Shown: positions 25,397 through 32,886 of the stretch, piece by piece
How the letters are laid out: every line of letters begins with the position of its first letter
How positions within the stretch are numbered: the stretch's first letter is position 1
NCBI GenBank assembly: GCA_013115145.1
Contig: JAAPAO010000395.1
Span: 1-33,378 of the forward strand
DNA: 33,378 nucleotides
Direction: 5' to 3'
DNA from: Perkinsus chesapeaki ATCC PRA-425
Lineage: Eukaryota > Protista > Perkinsozoa
Notes under the pieces: model-generated
What the model was told of the DNA's origin: nothing
The model's database searches: none
What the model saw: only the letters and a program-made list of their open reading frames with translations
Program-made: the position numbers and the translations under genes

Positions 25397-26548
25397 ATGG
25401 CATCTCTTTCCTCATTCTATGTGCCTTTTGAGGCGACTCCTACTATTGATATCAACTATCGGCAATTACCGCCATTACCATGGCGTAAGCTTCCCAGTGA
25501 AGTCCTCGGTAAGATTCTGTACTTCCTGGACCCCTTAAGAGACTGGCTAACTCTTGCCCAGAGCGGTGACCCTTTCCGTGCCCTCCTATACAACGGTATT
25601 TACCATGTTGAGTGCATTACATTGAGAATCGATCACAGCATATCTAACGACTGGCTCAAGCAGATCATTGAAGCTTATAGTTCCCGAGTGACCGAGGTTT
25701 CCTTGCTGGAGACCGGCAGTATCTCCCGTAGGCTATGGCCTGTCATTACTACTCTCGACAACTTGGAGACATTGTGCCTTCGAGACTTGCCAGCTCTACC
25801 TATCGGTGCCTTCAGTAAGGTAACTCGGTTTGAATACAAGCAAGCGATCCCGCCGGATACATGGCAGTCTCTTACCAGCTTCATCGAGTCCCTTCCAAAC
25901 CTCAACGTGCTTCACTTGATGGCTAACATCTCCGGTACACCATCGGCATCCAGCTGGATTGACCGTCCCCTCCAAGAGCTCCATGTTGACGCCTGGTGCT
26001 TTCAACCCGAAATTAATAAGCAACTTTACGATGATATAGTGAAATGCATCAATAAATCGCAGTTAACTCTTACTACCTTCTCCTACTCAAACCAGGTATG
26101 TGGTGACACGGACGCTCTCATGGGCGCATTAAGTGCTTGCAAGGCTCTGAGGCGTCTATCGCTCTCGAGCGTCGGCACCTTGCTTGAAGCCATCGTTGAG
26201 CTAGGCAACGATGGGTCTTCGAATCTAGAACACCTCTCTTTGAACTGCACCGCTGTGATCGGCGATGGTGGATCTTTCGCGAAATGGCTTGAAGGCTGTC
26301 AGCGCCTCAAAAGCCTCAGTCTGTATATGTACCGTGGCGATCCCCAACTAGTTCTTGCCGTGGTCACACCCGCGCTGAAGAAGTTGGTCAGTCTACAATA
26401 TCTGAGTATTGAGGGCTTCGACATGCCCGCTGAAGGCTGGTGGACAGTGGCAGAGTCTCTGCCCCGTTTGAAAGGTGTCTCCCTATGGGGAACTGCCCCA
26501 CCTGGCCTATTCGATGCTCACCCTCAGTTTCTTGTTTCATGGAGGTAG
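25397..26548 (+). CDS. F-box + LRR-like protein, intronless, 383 aa
   Basis: F-box-like WRKLPSEVLGKILYFLDPLRDWLTLAQSG; repeated LxxLxL units (LDNLETLCL, LPNLNVLHL, LRRLSL, LKSLSL, LQYLSI). Confidence 0.8.
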   Translation: MASLSSFYVPFEATPTIDINYRQLPPLPWRKLPSEVLGKILYFLDPLRDWLTLAQSGDPFRALLYNGIYHVECITLRIDHSISNDWLKQIIEAYSSRVTEVSLLETGSISRRLWPVITTLDNLETLCLRDLPALPIGAFSKVTRFEYKQAIPPDTWQSLTSFIESLPNLNVLHLMANISGTPSASSWIDRPLQELHVDAWCFQPEINKQLYDDIVKCINKSQLTLTTFSYSNQVCGDTDALMGALSACKALRRLSLSSVGTLLEAIVELGNDGSSNLEHLSLNCTAVIGDGGSFAKWLEGCQRLKSLSLYMYRGDPQLVLAVVTPALKKLVSLQYLSIEGFDMPAEGWWTVAESLPRLKGVSLWGTAPPGLFDAHPQFLVSWR

Positions 26549-26699: not shown

Positions 26700-28142
26700 A
26701 TGCCATCAAATGGCCGAAGACGCAAACGATACAGAAAGGCCGAGTCTGGCGGTGACGGATCATTCTTCAAGCGAATGCAGCGGCTCAGCCACCAATACGA
26801 GCCATCGTCGGCTTCCCTCGAGACGGCCTTGCGAGAAATCCTTCCCCAGCCCTCCCGGAAGGTCGTGAAGCCCCGTCGGCCGGCCCCTCCGAATCTGCTC
26901 TCGTGGCTCCCCATAGAGACCATCGACTTAGTGACGTCATTTCTACCACTCGTTCCCGACATACTCAACCTTCAGTGTATCTGCCAACGCTACAGTAATC
27001 TAGCCTCCAGGATGAGTTATGCCCTTGAAGATGTGGCTCTACCGGGTAACGTGAGATCCTGTTCCCACTTCCAGCGTGTCATGGCCATCATTTCGGCTCA
27101 TGTCAAGCGACTGGCCTGCGGATCAGAAGGAGTAACCAATCCTCTGGTTTGGTCGGCGGTCTCGACAGGGTTGCCTCCGATGCCCAAGCTGGAGCACTTA
27201 GAGCTCTTTGAACTGCCTGACAGACTCTCTACTACAAGGCTCAAGTTCCCGCCCGCCTTCAGCTCCTTTAAGTATGCGGGTACAAATCCTATCAATTGGG
27301 ACACCCTCTCCCGGTTCATCCGTGCAGTTCCGTCGTTGAGCTCCCTCGAACTGCAAGGCGTCGCTTTAGGCGCCCCAGGAGATTCTAGGTGGCTGTCGAA
27401 GGATGGGGGCTGGCGGAAGCTAGTCATCGGCGTCACCCTTCAAGACGCTCGGCAAGGCATTATTGTCGGCAACTCTTCCAGACGGCAGAGGGCAGTTGGC
27501 GACCTCTGCGATAGCGTCTCCTCCGCACTGGAAGCGTCAAAATCTACTCTGATGGAATTCGGGTTCAAGGAAGTGTGCACAAGGGGAATGTTGGACGCCT
27601 TACGAGGCTGCCAATCACTTGTAAAACTACAACTGACAATTAATAGGCAACGTGCCAGTGAACTAGTACCCCTTCCTGGATACGATACCCTGCGGAGCCT
27701 GCGCCTCGCCTTCCCCCTACCAGACGACACCACCAGGCGTGAGAGAGCCATGATGGACAGATCGGTCGACGATGTAGTGTCCAGTCTGTCGGCTTATCAA
27801 TCACTTCGACATATTGCGCTCGATGGTTGCAACACCCCACTGGAGCTGTCTCATGTCTCGATGAATGCCCTCGGCGGGTTGATGCTAGAGTCACTGGAGC
27901 TTCGAGATGTCCTTGTTATTCTGGGAGAGTTAGAGGAGCTCGAGGGGCTGGCACTCAGGACTCTGAGACATTTTACCATCACGGGACCATTACGGGAGAA
28001 GCCGGACACTTATCGGCTCCTTCGAGAGTCATGCCCAAAGTTGAGGACACTGACTGTGTCACTGTCCGACTTTACTCCCGGTCCTGTCGTCTATGATGAG
28101 ATAAGGCTGCTCCGGAGTAGTAGCGGCGTCAGAGTCCTTTGA
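26700..28142 (+). CDS. F-box + LRR-like protein, intronless, 480 aa
   Basis: F-box-like LSWLPIETIDLVTSFLPLVPDILNLQCICQRY; LxxLxL units (LEHLEL, LSSLEL, LVKLQL, LRSLRL, LESLEL, CPKLRTLTV). Confidence 0.8.
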   Translation: MPSNGRRRKRYRKAESGGDGSFFKRMQRLSHQYEPSSASLETALREILPQPSRKVVKPRRPAPPNLLSWLPIETIDLVTSFLPLVPDILNLQCICQRYSNLASRMSYALEDVALPGNVRSCSHFQRVMAIISAHVKRLACGSEGVTNPLVWSAVSTGLPPMPKLEHLELFELPDRLSTTRLKFPPAFSSFKYAGTNPINWDTLSRFIRAVPSLSSLELQGVALGAPGDSRWLSKDGGWRKLVIGVTLQDARQGIIVGNSSRRQRAVGDLCDSVSSALEASKSTLMEFGFKEVCTRGMLDALRGCQSLVKLQLTINRQRASELVPLPGYDTLRSLRLAFPLPDDTTRRERAMMDRSVDDVVSSLSAYQSLRHIALDGCNTPLELSHVSMNALGGLMLESLELRDVLVILGELEELEGLALRTLRHFTITGPLREKPDTYRLLRESCPKLRTLTVSLSDFTPGPVVYDEIRLLRSSSGVRVL

Positions 28143-28258
28143 TGATGATGAGATTGTCCATTATTAAGTGTTATAATTGTTGTAAGTTTCACTGCATGAA
28201 ATAATAGAGTTAGAGTTCGCATAATAGTATGGACAATACCGCTTACTAATAGCAATAA

Positions 28259-28724
28259 ATGGCCCCTAGACGGTTCACCCATGAGGAGGCACAGGAGAGG
28301 GTCTGCCGGTGGTGTGGCTGTAGAGGCAAGGTACCCGTAAGTGTCCTGCTCCCCGACAGGTGTATTCAGTTGATGCATAGCACTCGGGTCGATATGTACT
28401 ATCATACCCTTGCTGCCATTGGAGCTGATGTTACTAAGGATGATCCACACTTTCATCCATATAATATATGTGTTGGATGTGCCAATGTTATTAGACGGGT
28501 AGGAAAGACACTTGGAGGGCCGGGCTCAGAGATCAGAAATCCATCGGGCTCGACGAAGGTCCTTTATAGAGCTCGTAGAGGGCTAGAATCTAGGGTAACT
28601 TATAGGCCCTTTTGGGCTTTCCGAGAGAGGATACACTTTCCATGGGGATCATCTTACGGACTTCCTTGCAGTGCTCGAGTGCTTAGAACCAATGAACCCT
28701 GGCAAAACGCAGAATCTTGTTTGA
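28259..28724 (+). CDS. Chapa/RAG1-N-terminal-like zinc-finger mini-gene, copy 1 (second CxxC degenerate)
   Basis: Exons 28259-28330, 28370-28498, 28537-28558, 28606-28724 (last two tentative): H-EEAQERV-CRWCG ... IGADVTKD-DPHF-HPYNICVGC. Confidence 0.7.
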
Positions 28725-28847
28725 CTGTAATATGATTAATTATAGGTGTAATATTGCGTGAGATAGGGATTGGAAATCTCACTATATCATTTATAATTAT
28801 GAAACTGTTCACCTTGTTTGTATAGCTACATGTTCCTCAGTGTCGCC

Positions 28848-29111
28848 TCACCGGACCGAAAGATTGCCTTCGTGACCTTCCAGAACAGGTTGATTGGGGT
28901 AAACCAGTGGAGAGTGATAGTACCAAATCCCATCGGCAAGAATGCATGGTTTGTAGGGCAATGGCCCAGAAGAGTTTGCGATACATATGATGTGTTTCCT
29001 GCTCATCTGGCTTAGTGGATTGGAGTTGTCTTCAATTTCTCTTGTCAGCCGCAAAAGAGGTTTCAAGACCTCCCTACACTTCGATACCAACGCTCTGTCA
29101 CCCAGGCGCAT
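28848..29111 (-). pseudogene. Possible hAT-transposase-like fragment
   Basis: DRALVSKCREVLKPLLRLTREIE has the spacing of the hAT-type helix motif (W)xxLxxLxxxLxPFxxxTxxLE; there is no long ORF. Weak support. Confidence 0.25.
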
Positions 29112-29293
29112 TTGCCTAATACCTCCTTCAGGCGGGTATCACAATCCTTTCATCGATGAATCGTAATATAGTAGAACTGCTAGGTTTAGTAATTTACGCT
29201 GGTATCTATCTTCACGTGCTGCTGCATTCGTTGTATATCTTATCCAAAGCACAGCGAAGGACGTTCAGCTCAGTTTTTAAATCTTTCATTAGG

Positions 29294-29788
29294 ATGCCAG
29301 TGGGCATGAGCCATGCCATGGCTCAACAGCAGGTGTGTCGTTGGTGTGGAGCTCGACGGCGGAAAGGTGGGAAAGTGCGTTACCCATTCAAGACCTCTGC
29401 GTGCTTCCACCTCGGTCACATTTAGGGAATGTCTGCAGTCGACGATTTCGAAGTGATCCTTAAAAAGTGTGGGTATAACATATACCACGATAATGAGTAT
29501 TACCATCCCAAGAAGATATGCCAGAAGTGTCGAGTGGTCCTTGTTATGGTATGCCTTCTTTTTTGTGACGTGTCTATTTACTTTAATAATCTAATCAGAA
29601 CATAGACGACCCCGAAGCATGCCTGCACAATCTGCCGCCGCTGGTGGACTGGGGGGCTCCGAAGGAGCAAATAAAGGACCACTCGAAGTGTCGTGTATGT
29701 CTGGCCGCCTTGGGCAAATTGGAAGGTGCGTTCCTCAAGTTGCTTGTATCGATTCAAATCCTTCGCAGGTGTGAGGCCGTCTGACTGA
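29294..29788 (+). CDS. Chapa/RAG1-N-terminal-like zinc-finger mini-gene, copy 2 (complete motif)
   Basis: Exons 29294-29374, 29426-29548, 29599-29725, 29769-29788: H-AMAQQQV-CRWCG ... D-NEYY-HPKKICQKC ... LVDWGAPKEQIKDHSKCRVCLAALG. Confidence 0.8.
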
Positions 29789-29977
29789 TCGACTTCACCG
29801 CGGCTCAATGCTTATTCGTTTCTATCTCTTCGTTGTGTGTTGGAAGTTGTGGTATGATATAGCAAGGGAAATATCCCTTAGTCTGCCGAGCAACCTTCGC
29901 GACTGTCCTCAATCGATCGATTATCATTCCCCACATTAACCCCTCCCTAGAGGAGTGTTGGTATTATTATTATCAGC

Positions 29978-30396
29978 ATGGTTCTTTCCCATGAGAAGTC
30001 CCGTCATCGAGTGTGCCGATGGTGCGGCATGACCAAATGGCGAGGCTGGGTTAGTAACCTATCCAAGAGGTCTCTACTCCTTCCTTTAGCGTATGGACTA
30101 TGTATGCTACTTCAAGGATGATCTCAAGCTGCTCGGCATCGACATCGATTCTCCCAAAGAGAAGCTGCTACCAACTAGAATATGTCGCATTTGCCGTATG
30201 TGCTTCCAAGAGGTGAATCCTACCAATGCTCTTAACCTTCTTCGGACTGGTTTTTCAGTACCCCCACGACGCGGAAGGATTCGTTCGGCACGGTCGGGTA
30301 CCAGTTGATTGGACTCCGGTGTACCGGGACGAGCCCGGGGTCGATCATTCGAGATGCAAGGTGTGTTGCGCTGCAAGAGGGCAGCTCGTGAAATAG
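29978..30396 (+). CDS. Chapa/RAG1-N-terminal-like zinc-finger mini-gene, copy 3
   Basis: Exons 29978-30049, 30090-30212, 30259-30396: H-EKSRHRV-CRWCG ... LGIDIDSPKEKLLPTRICRIC ... PVDWTPVYRDEPGVDHSRCKVCCAARG. Confidence 0.8.
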
Positions 30397-30927
30397 CATC
30401 CTCAGCTACTTCATGCTACTGATGAGACTGTGTTTCCGTTATTCACAGTGTACTTGCGCTACTGCAGTTGGATCTATCCAGCGGGTCGATTGCTGAGTGG
30501 AAGATAATTGTGTGTAACCGTGGCTAGTTTGTAGGGTATACTTTAATTACTCATCGTGGCGGACTCTCCCGAACCTGAGAGCCCACGGTAGCAAATGCCT
30601 CGTTTGTGTTTTGACTCGGTTCACAGAGCCAGAGTCATAATTGTCATTTGTGGTAGTAGGTCCGATGTATCGGACGTCCAACTTATCGAAGATAACCCAA
30701 GCGTGACCGCGTACTCCACTCAACATGTAACCATGGTCTACTGTGTGTCACCAATGAGCATATCCGATAGGTAACATGGCACGTTTCATCGGCAACACAT
30801 GGTGAGGCGATAGACCCCATTGAGCCTGGTAATCAACCCTAGCGGAAGGCAATCCCATCCGGCCTCGTCAGGGTCCCCAATTCTAGTGTCACCGGTAACA
30901 ATCCATTCCCCTCGTCCACATAACATG

Positions 30928-32886
30928 CAGCACCTTCGACACGGGACTCCACTTACGAGTAGGGCTCATTGACATACGCGTGTCACCGCCCAGCCTTTAA
31001 TATGGATTCATACAACTTCCCAACGCCCAGGTACCCTTAACCTCTGCGCTACCACCATCGGAGCCGGCATGCTCGGTCTGCCCAGAGCCTTCGCGTCCTG
31101 TGGGATCCTACTTGGTGTAACTACTCCCCCAAACGATGATTATCTTCTCTTTTAGATTCTGGTAATTGTTGTTACCGCCTTGGCAACTGATAGAACGCTC
31201 GTATGGCTGGTTATGTGTGCGCGTGAAAGCCGGCGAAGGTACGCCATCAACCAAGCACGATCGCTTGCATCGTCTTTAGGTCGTATGAGAGCAACGCTCG
31301 CGTTTACCTCGGGACGATGGGGGAAAGGCTTCTCAATACTGCCTTGGTGAGGCCGTCCTCTCTTCACGTCCGCACAATCGCTGTCCCTATCCAGTTGCTA
31401 TTACTCTTTGGGGCATGTACGGCCATGATGGTTATCACAATCGACCTGGAACCGCAATTTCTGATGCTGCTTCTCCCCGGGGTGATGCCTCTATAGTCCA
31501 TATATTACTCGCCTATCTGTGCAGGCATCGCCTCTGGTTGCAGCCATCATGTCCAGCGCTCTCGTGCTGCCTTTCACTCTGTCGAAGGATCTTAGGTAGC
31601 TTCCTCCACCCTATCAAGCCCCAGTGCTCCTTCTCCTATAGTGTTCTCCGGTATGCCTCAGCTGCATCGCTGGTATGCATTTTCATTCTTTTCCTGACGC
31701 AAGTGTATCTCATGGTCATGGCCGATACCAAGGTGCGCGCGGACTCGCGCTCAGCAGGTGGCATCTCCTTCCTCGGTGTAGATCAATCCAACAGTTTCCG
31801 TCTGGCGACCGCAGGGCCTCTGGTCAGTGATCGCCTCGTTCCCGCTAGTTCTATCATCTTATGTTGGACACTTCAACATTTTCAAGATAGACTACGAACT
31901 CAAGCATCGCTACCACGGTGATATGAGTAACACTGCCATTTGCCTCATCGGAGCTCCAACGCTCTCCTTCTATACAGATAACATAATACATGTGTCGATA
32001 TGTGGTATAGCTACTCCACTCTACATCGCCTCTGGACTCATGGGGTATCTTCTCTACGGCGAAAGCGTTAAGAGCAACCTTGTGCAGGTTGGTTGTGGCG
32101 TATCTTGTGCACACTTAACATTCGATCTCAGGAGTGGTATGGGTCCCCCGAGTTGATGTTGCAAGTGTGCCAAGTGGCTGTCATTCTCACTAACTTGTAG
32201 CACTAACTCCCTCTCTTTTGTAGTGGTAATGATCTTATCCCACCAGATTCAAGTTCCCACTACTATTGGCTCCCCTCAGGGAAAGCCTAACCGAAAGAGT
32301 GATTGCCAATGCATTTCTCCCTGCACCTTGTCCCTCAACAGGTTCCTACGCTAAAAAACGTTAATAACGTCGCCCTCACATCGTCCCTATTTATCTTGAT
32401 CATTCTCGCCGCCCTATCAACTAAATCGTTGGGAACTGTAAGCATCAAAGGCTGCTAGTCACTTTCGATTTCCCTCAGGTATTAGCACTCGTTGGCAGCT
32501 TATCGGGCTCAGCGGTCGGTCTTATTCTACCGGCATCTATGTACCTTGGAAACAGCCGGCTCTCAGAAAGCGTAGACTCTTGTTTAGGTACGTCTCCTAC
32601 AGGCGTCGAGGCCACGCAAGGGAGACGTTATTGCGTGAGATAGAGCAGGCGGCAATGGAAATGCATGAAGCTCATCGCAACGACCCGATGCTTGAGGGGC
32701 TCATGCCTCCACCACCATTGGTCGCCACGGATGAGCCAGTCGTGAGTTATTGGACTGCTGTTCCCACGGTGAGTAACAGCTGCTCATAGCATATCCGATC
32801 CCTCTTTGCAGGGGATTCTCCTACTCGGGATTGGAGAGGCTTTGCTAGGATTCATAGCAACCTTGCGGGACTGGGGAACCCGATGA
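30928..32886 (+). CDS. Amino-acid transporter (Aa_trans/AAAP family), multi-exon; 5' end uncertain (may start near 30560)
   Basis: TLNLCATTIGAGMLGLPRAFASCGILL, hydrophobic exons, YVGHFNIFKIDYEL, GYLLYGESVKSNL, LVGSLSGSAVGLILPASMYL; last exon GILLLGIGEALLGFIATLRDWGTR* (stop 32884-32886). Confidence 0.88.

What the first reader, a model, noticed from the sequence alone, without database searches (positions are those of the whole stretch)
28259..30396. Tandem cluster of three spliced stand-alone Chapa/RAG1-N-terminal-type zinc-finger genes with no transposase core
Seen in sequence: after removing short introns, three adjacent plus-strand mini-genes each encode H-x7-C-R-W-C-G, then a D-x4-H-P-x3-C-x2-C-type segment (DDPHFHPYNICVGC; DNEYYHPKKICQKC; the degenerate IDIDSPKEKLLPTRICRIC). 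Copies 2 and 3 continue to W-x(9-11)-DH-x2-C-x2-C-x4-G (VDWGAPKEQIKDHSKCRVCLAALG; VDWTPVYRDEPGVDHSRCKVCCAARG). Established knowledge, recalled and to be verified: this is the order and spacing of the Chapa motif at the N-terminus of Chapaev transposases and of the RAG1 non-core zinc-binding region (human RAG1 roughly HQANLRHLCRICG...[21 protein letters not shown]...EWHPHTPSCDIC). Inference: a transposase-derived zinc module has been domesticated and amplified as intron-containing host genes in a non-animal lineage, free of any DDE core, RING domain or TIRs. The ORF track hides this because introns break every copy.
Basis: partly seen in the sequence, partly recalled or inferred. Interest (0 to 1): 0.87.

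Follow-up and report, generated by a model that had tools for sequence, protein, structure and literature searches.

The report
Free-standing RAG1-type zinc domains in Perkinsus
A mollusc parasite (Perkinsus) has three neighbouring, expressed and conserved mini-genes, each encoding only the two-zinc domain otherwise known from the front end of the antibody-gene recombinase RAG1 and Chapaev transposases of animals; among the relatives these searches returned whose source organism could be identified, this is the only non-animal case.

Summary
Window 28259-30396 carries three separate plus-strand genes of 116, 116 and 110 aa. RNA contigs confirm every intron (GT..AG, 39-342 nt), a spliced-leader 5' end on all three and poly(A) tails on genes 1 and 2. 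Gene 2 has a third intron.

The organism is a Perkinsus. The same three genes lie in the same order in P. olseni (L001). Protein identity is 82-91% although synonymous sites are saturated (pN/pS 0.08-0.16).

Each protein is one complete RAG1 NZD / Chapa-type domain. All eight zinc ligands of the mouse RAG1 NMR structure are present. Spacing is identical at six; the last histidine-to-cysteine gap matches in gene 1 and is one residue shorter in genes 2 and 3.
- A Perkinsus-only profile retrieves Pfam RAG1_imp_bd members, including a sea-urchin RAG1-like protein with its catalytic core.
- hhalign gives 99.1% probability.
- An animal-only profile scores the three proteins at 33-58 bits.
- The models' nearest predicted structures are RAG1 N-termini.

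Direct Pfam scans stay below threshold.

There is no DDE core, RING or terminal inverted repeat. Descent from a transposase is plausible but untested, and the function is inferred. Other notes of this scan report Chapaev-like transposons elsewhere in this genome; I did not check them.

The parts
28241..29005 (+). Gene 1 mRNA. The spliced leader is joined at 28241 or 28251 and the poly(A) tail follows about 29005. Three exons.
   Evidence: contig pieces 28241/28251-28328, 28368-28497 and 28840-29005; loose 5' ends carrying the spliced leader; loose 3' A-run.
28259..28330 (+). Gene 1 coding exon 1. It encodes H8-x7-C16-x2-C19, i.e. the first ZFb ligand and the first ZFa pair.
28370..28498 (+). 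Gene 1 coding exon 2. It encodes D-D-P-x-x-H-P-x3-C58-x2-C61, the second ZFa pair.
28841..28990 (+). It encodes V-D-W...H98-x3-C102-x2-C105 (the ZFb ligands) and the stop codon.
   Evidence: the P. olseni orthologue P0002 has the same structure.
29267..29821 (+). Gene 2 mRNA. The spliced leader is joined at 29267 or 29272 and the poly(A) tail follows about 29821. Four exons.
29294..29374 (+). Gene 2 coding exon 1. It encodes H7-x7-C15-x2-C18.
29426..29548 (+). Gene 2 coding exon 2. It encodes H-P-x3-C59-x2-C62.
29599..29725 (+). Gene 2 coding exon 3. It encodes V-D-W...H96-x2-C99-x2-C102.
29769..29788 (+). Gene 2 coding part of exon 4: the last six residues and the stop codon.
   Evidence: (a 43-nt GT..AG joint).
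29975..30438 (+). Gene 3 mRNA. The spliced leader is joined at 29975, three bases before the ATG. The contigs end at 30431-30438.
29978..30049 (+). Gene 3 coding exon 1. It encodes H5-x7-C13-x2-C16.
30090..30212 (+). Gene 3 coding exon 2. It encodes L-P-x3-C56-x2-C59.
30259..30396 (+). Gene 3 coding exon 3. It encodes V-D-W...H95-x2-C98-x2-C101 and the stop codon.

Best explanation
Shown: three tandem Perkinsus genes are transcribed, cis-spliced and carry a spliced leader at the 5' end. Poly(A) tails were seen on genes 1 and 2. Between two Perkinsus species they are under strong purifying selection.

Shown at the level of sequence profiles and predicted structures: each 110-116 aa protein consists entirely of one RAG1 NZD / Chapa-type domain with the type I ligand scheme.
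- ZFa site, four cysteines: the C-x2-C of the C-R-W-C-G motif plus the C-x2-C that follows (H/L)-P-x3.
- ZFb site: the histidine seven residues before the first cysteine plus the C-terminal H-x2/3-C-x2-C.
- Like invertebrate RAG1-like and Chapaev domains, and unlike vertebrate RAG1, there is no H2 insertion.

Inferred: each protein folds around two structural zinc ions into a small basic module (pI 8.8-9.1). It acts as a free-standing binding scaffold for nucleic acid and/or protein partners rather than as an enzyme. The three paralogues arose by duplication in the Perkinsus lineage before the split of this species from P. olseni, and have diverged in partner specificity.

Most likely origin, also inferred: the N-terminal module of a Chapaev- or RAG-like transposase was retained as a host gene after loss of the catalytic part. 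One concrete possible role is regulating or competing with resident Chapaev-type transposases, much as N-terminal-only transposase fragments repress P elements.
For: Transcripts: seven GT..AG joints, spliced-leader 5' ends on all three genes and poly(A) on genes 1 and 2, in four runs.

Organism and conservation:
- Orthologues and the gene order F-box/LRR, gene 1, gene 2, gene 3, Aa_trans are kept in P. olseni.
- pN is 0.056-0.129 against pS 0.64-0.80. Introns and spacers are only 40-59% identical.

Sequence homology:
- An exhaustive hmmsearch with a two-sequence Perkinsus profile over 1.84 billion proteins gave 26 hits.
- Nine non-Perkinsus hits were scanned whole against Pfam. Five pass the PF12560 gathering score (33-114 bits) and a sixth (P0013) falls 0.3 bits short. 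One of the five, the Diadema RAG1-like protein, also has a RAG1 core at 237 bits.
- hhalign of the Perkinsus trio against 15 animal modules: probability 99.1%, E 4e-19, 97 columns.
- 13 of those 15 modules match PF12560 at E <= 0.01.
- The animal-only profile scores the window proteins 58, 57 and 33 bits over their full length.
- A Perkinsus-only profile against all PDB sequences has the mouse RAG1 NZD (21wb) as best hit, E 0.0084.

Zinc ligands follow the NMR structure, H102, C110, C113, C175, C178, H206, C210, C213 (preprint 10.64898/2026.01.24.700457). All eight are present in all three proteins. Only the H-to-C gap of ZFb differs, by one residue, in genes 2 and 3.

Predicted structure:
- AF2 models have pLDDT 89.4 and 82.7.
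- In AlphaFold DB clusters the top four matches are RAG1 or RAG1 importin-binding proteins, probability 0.99-1.0, TM 0.54-0.56.
- In Swiss-Prot models the top match is mouse RAG1 residues 102-222.
- In the ESM Atlas the matches have TM 0.57-0.68 over 94-108 residues, five of the ten listed being vertebrate RAG1 fragments.
- Language-model features point to RAG1_imp_bd clusters.

The six Perkinsus sequences form one group in the tree, support 91/92.
Against: - No Perkinsus protein reaches Pfam's gathering score for PF12560 by itself: copy 1 scores E 1.8 and P0006 has no hit.
- Against solved structures only ZADs match, weakly (Z 2.6-4.0), and only over the ZFa half.
- The Swiss-Prot Foldseek E-values are not significant.
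- The animal set used for hhalign and for the reverse profile was itself retrieved with a Perkinsus profile, which flatters those scores.
- Zinc binding, partners, localisation and any link to transposons are untested.
- The exhaustive search found no Perkinsus protein joining this module to a DDE core, so the proposed transposase ancestor has not been seen.
Confidence: 0.8

Rival explanations
1. The proteins are ordinary ZAD-type (zf-AD) single-zinc treble-clef domains. The extra His and C-terminal H/C/C are incidental.
For: - Sub-threshold zf-AD hit on gene 3 exon 2 (E 0.011).
- A ZAD (7po9) is the second-best PDB sequence hit, E 0.084.
- The six best solved-structure matches by VIA-align are all ZADs, Z 2.6-4.0.
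- 6 of 15 animal relatives also touch zf-AD.
Against: - The ZAD matches cover only model residues about 8-75, the ZFa half.
- The four ZFb ligands are conserved in all six Perkinsus sequences, in near-RAG1 spacing.
- Profile alignments to RAG1_imp_bd members run through both ends.
- RAG1 N-termini outrank ZADs in AlphaFold DB and the ESM Atlas.
- The NZD preprint itself reports ZAD as the remote relative of ZFa, so weak ZAD hits are expected for a true NZD.
Confidence: 0.06
2. The fold assignment is right but the direction is reversed. The Perkinsus genes represent an old cellular, free-standing two-zinc domain. They are not a domesticated transposase piece; transposases captured such a domain.
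For: - The trio is old: paralogues are 32-41% identical and synonymous sites are saturated between species.
- It has host-type short introns and trans-splicing.
- It forms its own group, not nested in any animal clade, in an unresolved tree.
- No Perkinsus module-plus-DDE protein was retrieved.
- The preprint postulates a free two-zinc intermediate before capture by transposases.
Against: - Every retrieved relative whose source organism could be identified is from an animal. Most hits carried no organism label.
- No homologue from other alveolates or protists appeared in an exhaustive search. A patchy Perkinsus-plus-animals distribution fits transfer of a mobile element better.
- Other notes of this scan report Chapaev-like transposons in the same genome (unchecked).
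Confidence: 0.2
3. The copies are decaying transposon fragments or contaminating host (mollusc) DNA rather than functional Perkinsus genes.
For: All identifiable relatives are animal sequences. Perkinsus lives inside molluscs.
Against: - Spliced-leader 5' ends.
- 39-51 nt introns.
- Conserved gene order in an independently assembled P. olseni genome.
- pN/pS 0.08-0.16 with unalignable introns.
- Intact reading frames in both species.
- No TIRs or DNA-level repeats.
Confidence: 0.02

Closest known systems
[quoted passage not shown]
   Same: - Ligand order and spacing are shared: H-x7-C-x2-C ... C-x2-C ... H-x3-C-x2-C. Gene 1 is identical; genes 2 and 3 have H-x2-C.
- Also shared are the D-x3-(H)-P motif before the second C-x2-C and the W before the last histidine.
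- It is the best PDB sequence hit.
- It is the best Swiss-Prot structure hit, aligned from H102 to residue 222.
   Different: - The Perkinsus proteins are the domain alone. There is no disordered N-terminus, NoLS, RING or recombinase core.
- There is no vertebrate H2 helix or basic loop.
- An insertion of 9-11 residues lies between the W and the last histidine.
- They score below the Pfam gathering threshold.
- The host is an alveolate, not a vertebrate.
Chapa domain of Chapaev transposases, type I, and the NZD of invertebrate RAG1-like proteins (Kapitonov & Jurka 2007, cited in PMC4411706; preprint 10.64898/2026.01.24.700457)
   Same: - Compact H1-H3-H4 version without H2.
[quoted passage not shown]
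- Extra C-terminal helix in the models.
- The Diadema RAG1-like protein P0011 and a RING-linked module (P0016) were retrieved directly by the Perkinsus profile.
   Different: - No DDE core, no RING and no TIRs.
- These are single-copy syntenic host genes under purifying selection.
- No Repbase Chapaev sequences were available here, so the trio was never compared directly with a Chapaev Chapa domain.
ZAD (zf-AD, PF07776) of arthropod and vertebrate zinc-finger proteins
   Same: The ZFa half (C4 site plus two helices) superposes weakly on ZAD crystal structures, Z 2.6-4.0.
   Different: - ZAD has one zinc site and dimerises.
- ZAD sits in front of C2H2 arrays.
- The Perkinsus proteins add a complete second site and stand alone.
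Small animal proteins annotated 'RAG1 importin binding domain-containing protein' (ESM Atlas and AlphaFold DB clusters of 115-157 aa)
   Same: Similar size and fold, with no attached core: TM 0.61-0.66, language-model score 0.93.
   Different: - They are from animals only and are uncharacterised. Whether they are genes or transposon fragments is unknown.
- The Perkinsus trio is shown to be expressed, syntenic and constrained.

Membership tests
RAG1 NZD / Chapa domain | ZFa site: two C-x2-C pairs about 40-60 residues apart (mouse C110, C113, C175, C178). | tested here: met
   Gene 1: C16, C19, C58, C61. Gene 2: C15, C18, C59, C62. Gene 3: C13, C16, C56, C59. The same holds in P. olseni.
RAG1 NZD / Chapa domain | ZFb site, type I: a His seven residues before the first Cys, plus a C-terminal H-x3-C-x2-C (mouse H102, H206, C210, C213). 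| tested here: met
   Gene 1: H8, H98, C102, C105, with identical spacing. Gene 2: H7, H96, C99, C102. Gene 3: H5, H95, C98, C101. Genes 2 and 3 have H-x2-C, one residue shorter.
RAG1 NZD / Chapa domain | Statistically significant sequence-profile similarity to recognised members. | tested here: met
   Whole-library E-values run from 8.6e-18 to about 1e-4 for proteins that pass the PF12560 gathering score. hhalign gives 99.1%, E 4e-19. The reverse animal-only profile scores 33-58 bits. The best PDB hit is 21wb, E 0.0084.
RAG1 NZD / Chapa domain | The single sequence scores above Pfam's gathering threshold for PF12560 (23.3 bits). | tested here: not met
   The gene 1 ORF scores 8.5 bits, E 1.8. 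P0006 has no hit at E <= 1. PF12560 is built mainly on vertebrate RAG1 and includes about 150 positions outside the zinc domain.
RAG1 NZD / Chapa domain | Fold: helices H1, H3 and H4 around two interleaved zinc sites. | tested here: met
   The models have pLDDT 89 and 83, with helices at the expected places and no H2. Their nearest predicted structures are RAG1 N-termini, TM 0.54-0.68.
RAG1 NZD / Chapa domain | Binds two zinc ions per monomer, and folding depends on zinc. | not testable with these tools
   Needs ICP-OES or ICP-MS and EDTA titration of purified protein.
Chapaev or RAG1-like transposase (whole protein or element) | DDE/RNase H-like catalytic core downstream of the zinc module; terminal inverted repeats and target-site duplication. 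| tested here: not met
   The mRNAs run from spliced leader to poly(A) (genes 1 and 2) or contig end (gene 3) in 465-765 nt of genome, and the CDS ends right after the domain. There is no core-domain hit. No TIRs flank the genes or the cluster.
ZAD (zf-AD, PF07776) | Scores above the Pfam gathering threshold (28 bits); a single C4 zinc site; placed N-terminal to C2H2 arrays. | tested here: not met
   The best score is 16.3 bits. A second, conserved H/H/C/C site is present. No C2H2 array is present.

The most novel reading that the evidence does not exclude
The Perkinsus trio is the first free-standing, selectively maintained NZD/Chapa-fold gene family outside animals. One reading is that it is a domesticated, Chapa-only regulator of resident Chapaev-type transposons, acquired with a mobile element from the mollusc host. 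The other is that it is a surviving example of the free two-zinc 'intermediate' that the 2026 NZD preprint postulates existed before capture by RAG1 and Chapaev ancestors. Either way it gives a small, soluble, single-domain system, in a culturable and transfectable protist, for finding out what this domain binds. That question is still open for RAG1 itself.
Probability: 0.4. Interest if true: 0.75.

Novelty: new variant of a known kind. Interest (0 to 1): 0.62.

Why it matters
The zinc domain at the N-terminus of RAG1 was given a structure only in 2026, and its function is still unknown. The preprint that solved it describes it as RAG1-family specific, shared consistently only with animal Chapaev transposases. 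It treats the few other proteins carrying it as sporadic and incoherent.

Here the same domain forms a coherent, expressed, strongly constrained three-gene family in an alveolate parasite, with nothing else attached. This has three consequences:
- It extends the known range of the fold beyond animals.
- It bears on where the RAG1 N-terminus came from: a cellular domain, or a transposon module spread by horizontal transfer between a parasite and its mollusc hosts.
- It offers a minimal natural version of the domain for binding and structural studies.

For Perkinsus annotation, it shows that three real genes are missing or mis-fused in current gene models.

Tried and rejected
- Direct Pfam scans of the exons and of P0006 gave only sub-threshold hits: RAG1_imp_bd E 1.8, zf-AD 0.011, ZCCHC24_C 0.026.
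- A word-index search with the N-terminus of the Diadema RAG1-like protein, meant to gather an NZD set independent of the Perkinsus query, returned only the query itself.
- A word-index search with the 23-sequence alignment returned four already known proteins. The taxonomic range therefore rests on the single exhaustive search and on the structure and language-model libraries.
- Foldseek against the PDB found nothing significant. VIA-align found only weak ZAD matches. 21WB did not appear in the structure searches, although it is in the sequence copy.
- Nei-Gojobori dS could not be Jukes-Cantor corrected for genes 1 and 2 because pS exceeds 0.75, so I report pN and pS instead.
- My first intron guesses were wrong and were corrected from the P. 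olseni models and the RNA joints: gene 1 intron 1 at 28337, and the gene 2 acceptor at 29605.
- The first semi-global exon alignment script failed and was replaced.
- The search for TIRs and DNA-level repeats found only short chance matches.
- The tree does not resolve which animal group is closest, so no donor can be named.
- Model coordinates are not exposed, so zinc-site geometry could not be measured.
Full report
**What is in the sequence.** Between 28259 and 30396 the plus strand carries three short genes, and each is broken by small introns. I first derived models from the sequence. I then corrected them with the annotated P. olseni orthologues and with RNA. Logan contigs of four 454 metatranscriptome runs (two samples, one study) lie on the window with no differences. 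They skip exactly seven GT..AG introns:
- Gene 1: 28331-28369 and 28499-28840.
- Gene 2: 29375-29425, 29549-29598 and 29726-29768.
- Gene 3: 30050-30089 and 30213-30258.

The contigs begin with a spliced-leader sequence joined at 28241/28251, 29267/29272 and 29975. Those of genes 1 and 2 end in A-runs after about 29005 and 29821. The leader letters are those of the dinoflagellate-type leader. The published P. marinus leaders differ from it by one base or one deletion (PMC3101222). Since the libraries are labelled RT-PCR, that base may come from the primer. Either way, the mRNAs carry a leader at the 5' end. The resulting proteins are 116, 116 and 110 aa.

- Gene 1 does have the third element (V-D-W...H-x3-C-x2-C). 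It lies in a third exon at 28841-28990, behind a 342-nt intron.
- Gene 2 has a third, 43-nt intron near its end.
- The H-P to L-P change in gene 3 is conserved in P. olseni and is not at a zinc ligand.

**Whose genes they are.** The closest database proteins are hypothetical proteins of Perkinsus olseni. A 68-kb P. olseni contig (L001) holds the same three genes in the same order. They sit between an F-box/LRR gene and an amino-acid transporter gene, as in the window. P. olseni gene models fuse neighbouring members with each other or with the flanking genes.

The window is therefore from a Perkinsus species other than P. olseni. Protein identity is 82%, 89% and 91%. Synonymous sites are saturated (pS 0.80, 0.76, 0.64), and introns and spacers are 40-59% identical, which is close to unalignable. 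pN is 0.129, 0.060 and 0.056, so pN/pS is 0.16, 0.08 and 0.09. These are constrained genes, not decaying fragments. The three paralogues are only 32-41% identical to each other. In a tree each pairs with its P. olseni orthologue, and all six form one group with support 91/92. The triplication therefore predates the species split.

**What the proteins are: sequence evidence.** Single-sequence Pfam scans give only sub-threshold hits: RAG1_imp_bd E 1.8 and zf-AD E 0.011. An exhaustive hmmsearch with a profile of just two Perkinsus paralogues, against 1.84 billion representative proteins, returned 26 hits at E <= 0.001. Apart from Perkinsus sequences, every hit whose source could be identified is from an animal: amphioxus, the hydrozoan Clytia, the sea urchin Diadema and the annelid Owenia. 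Most hits carry no organism label.

I scanned nine non-Perkinsus hits whole against Pfam. Five pass the gathering score for PF12560 (RAG1 importin binding, which contains the N-terminal zinc region) at 33-114 bits, and a sixth (P0013) falls 0.3 bits short. Among the five:
- P0011 is annotated 'V(D)J recombination-activating protein 1-like'. It carries the RAG1 recombinase core at 237 bits behind the module.
- In P0016 the module is followed by a RING finger, as in RAG1.

Further tests agree:
- Profile against profile, the Perkinsus trio aligns to 15 animal modules with 99.1% probability, E 4e-19, over 97 columns. The alignment runs from the N-terminal histidine to the last C-x2-C.
- 13 of those 15 modules match PF12560 at E <= 0.01.
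- An HMM built from the animal modules alone scores the window proteins at 58, 57 and 33 bits over their full length. Nothing else among 1019 stop-to-stop fragments of the window and L001 scores.
[quoted passage not shown] A Drosophila ZAD comes next at E 0.084.

One caveat applies. The animal set was gathered with a Perkinsus query, which flatters the hhalign and reverse-profile scores. The whole-library E-values and the PDB result do not share that bias.

**Zinc ligands.** The 2026 preprint that solved the mouse domain (10.64898/2026.01.24.700457) assigns ZFa to C110, C113, C175 and C178, and ZFb to H102, H206, C210 and C213. [quoted passage not shown]

| Protein | ZFa ligands | ZFb ligands |
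|---|---|---|
| Gene 1 | C16, C19, C58, C61 | H8, H98, C102, C105 |
| Gene 2 | C15, C18, C59, C62 | H7, H96, C99, C102 |
| Gene 3 | C13, C16, C56, C59 | H5, H95, C98, C101 |

The H-x7-C-x2-C spacing is identical to mouse in all three. The last element is H-x3-C-x2-C in gene 1, as in mouse, and H-x2-C-x2-C in genes 2 and 3. The term 'Chapa domain', and its restriction to Chapaev and RAG-related elements of animals, are confirmed in PMC4411706.

**What the proteins are: structural evidence.** AlphaFold2 models of the P. olseni orthologues of gene 3 and gene 1 are confident: pLDDT 89.4 with pTM 0.81, and pLDDT 82.7 with pTM 0.74. The helices fall where H1, H3 and H4 are expected, with no H2 insertion.
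- Among 2.3 million AlphaFold DB clusters, the four best matches are named RAG1 or RAG1 importin-binding domain proteins, with probability 0.99-1.0 and TM 0.54-0.56.
- Among Swiss-Prot models, the top match is mouse RAG1 residues 102-222, aligned to model residues 5-110. Seven RAG1 orthologues are in the top 16, but the E-values are not significant. The preprint reports that database models of this region are poor, which may explain the weak scores.
- In the ESM Atlas, the nearest models have TM 0.57-0.68 by query over 94-108 residues. Five of the ten listed are vertebrate RAG1 fragments, one is a small 'RAG1 importin binding domain-containing' cluster, and the rest are unnamed animal clusters or a TNP-like transposase cluster.
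- Language-model feature searches give the same families at 0.92-0.93, with 199-209 shared features.
- Against solved structures there is nothing significant by Foldseek. VIA-align finds only weak ZAD matches, Z 2.6-4.0, confined to the ZFa half. The preprint reports the same result for the RAG1 domain itself.

**What is absent.** Each mRNA spans only 465-765 nt of genome, and the coding sequence ends right after the domain. There is no catalytic core, RING or other Pfam domain. No terminal inverted repeats or DNA-level repeats surround the genes or the cluster. The exhaustive search found no Perkinsus protein that joins this module to anything else, apart from obvious gene-model fusions.

**How it most likely works.** The following is shown: expression, splicing, constraint, and homology at profile and model level to the NZD/Chapa domain with a full set of ligands.

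The following is inferred. Each protein folds around two structural zinc ions into a compact basic module (pI 8.8-9.1). It acts as a binding scaffold for nucleic acid or protein partners. The preprint draws the same conclusion for the domain in RAG1, whose partners are still unknown.

The origin is also inferred. All identified relatives are animal proteins, many of them on mobile elements, so the most economical story is retention of the N-terminal module of a Chapaev- or RAG-like transposase as a host gene. Other notes of this scan report Chapaev-like transposons elsewhere in this genome; one has been followed up and the rest have not been. I could not check them, so they are a lead only. 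If they hold, a Chapa-only host protein that competes with or regulates such transposases is a concrete, testable role. The opposite direction, a cellular domain later captured by transposases, is not excluded, and the tree does not resolve a sister group.

**Comparison with what is known, and novelty.** The domain is known: Chapa in 2007 and 2015, NZD in 2026. I found no paper linking it to Perkinsus or to any protist. Small free-standing versions exist in animal databases but are uncharacterised. What is new is the combination: a non-animal host, a domain-only architecture, tandem triplication, and direct evidence of expression and long-term constraint. I rate this a new variant of a known kind. 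It is of moderate-to-high interest for the evolution of RAG and for the function of the domain.

Noticed in passing
window 29294-29375 (run X4, record 12): A second spliced gene-2-like transcript, with 7 differences in 82 nt and a diverged exon 2, is present in the same sample. It comes from another Perkinsus strain or species, or from an unassembled paralogue.
   Followed up: no
L001 6001-11094; proteins P0001, P0003, P0005: P. olseni gene models mis-fuse these genes. Gene 1 is fused with gene 2 (P0001, P0003). The upstream F-box/LRR gene is fused with the start of gene 2 (P0005). Gene 3 is fused with the downstream amino-acid transporter (574-aa model). The window's own versions of these proteins did not appear in any protein search.
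   Followed up: partly
window 29005-29272 and 29821-29975: The gaps between the poly(A) site of one gene and the spliced-leader acceptor of the next are only about 265 and 155 nt. The three genes may be cut from one polycistronic precursor by trans-splicing.
   Followed up: no
window 25397-26548 and 26700-28142 (+): Two tandem intron-poor ORFs encode F-box-like/LRR proteins directly upstream of the cluster. An Aa_trans exon lies downstream at about 31827-32156. The same neighbours flank the cluster in P. olseni.
   Followed up: partly
proteins P0004, P0007; ESM Atlas clusters: In animals, NZD-like modules also occur outside RAG1-like and Chapaev proteins. An amphioxus protein has three in tandem. 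An echinoderm cluster of TNP-like (P-element/THAP9-type RNase H) proteins has one at the N-terminus. The domain has been recruited by more transposase types than the literature lists.
   Followed up: no
window 28499-28840: Gene 1 intron 2 is 342 nt (675 nt in P. olseni), whereas the other six introns are 39-51 nt. It contains the in-frame read-through that makes the misleading 158-aa ORF 28259-28735.
   Followed up: partly
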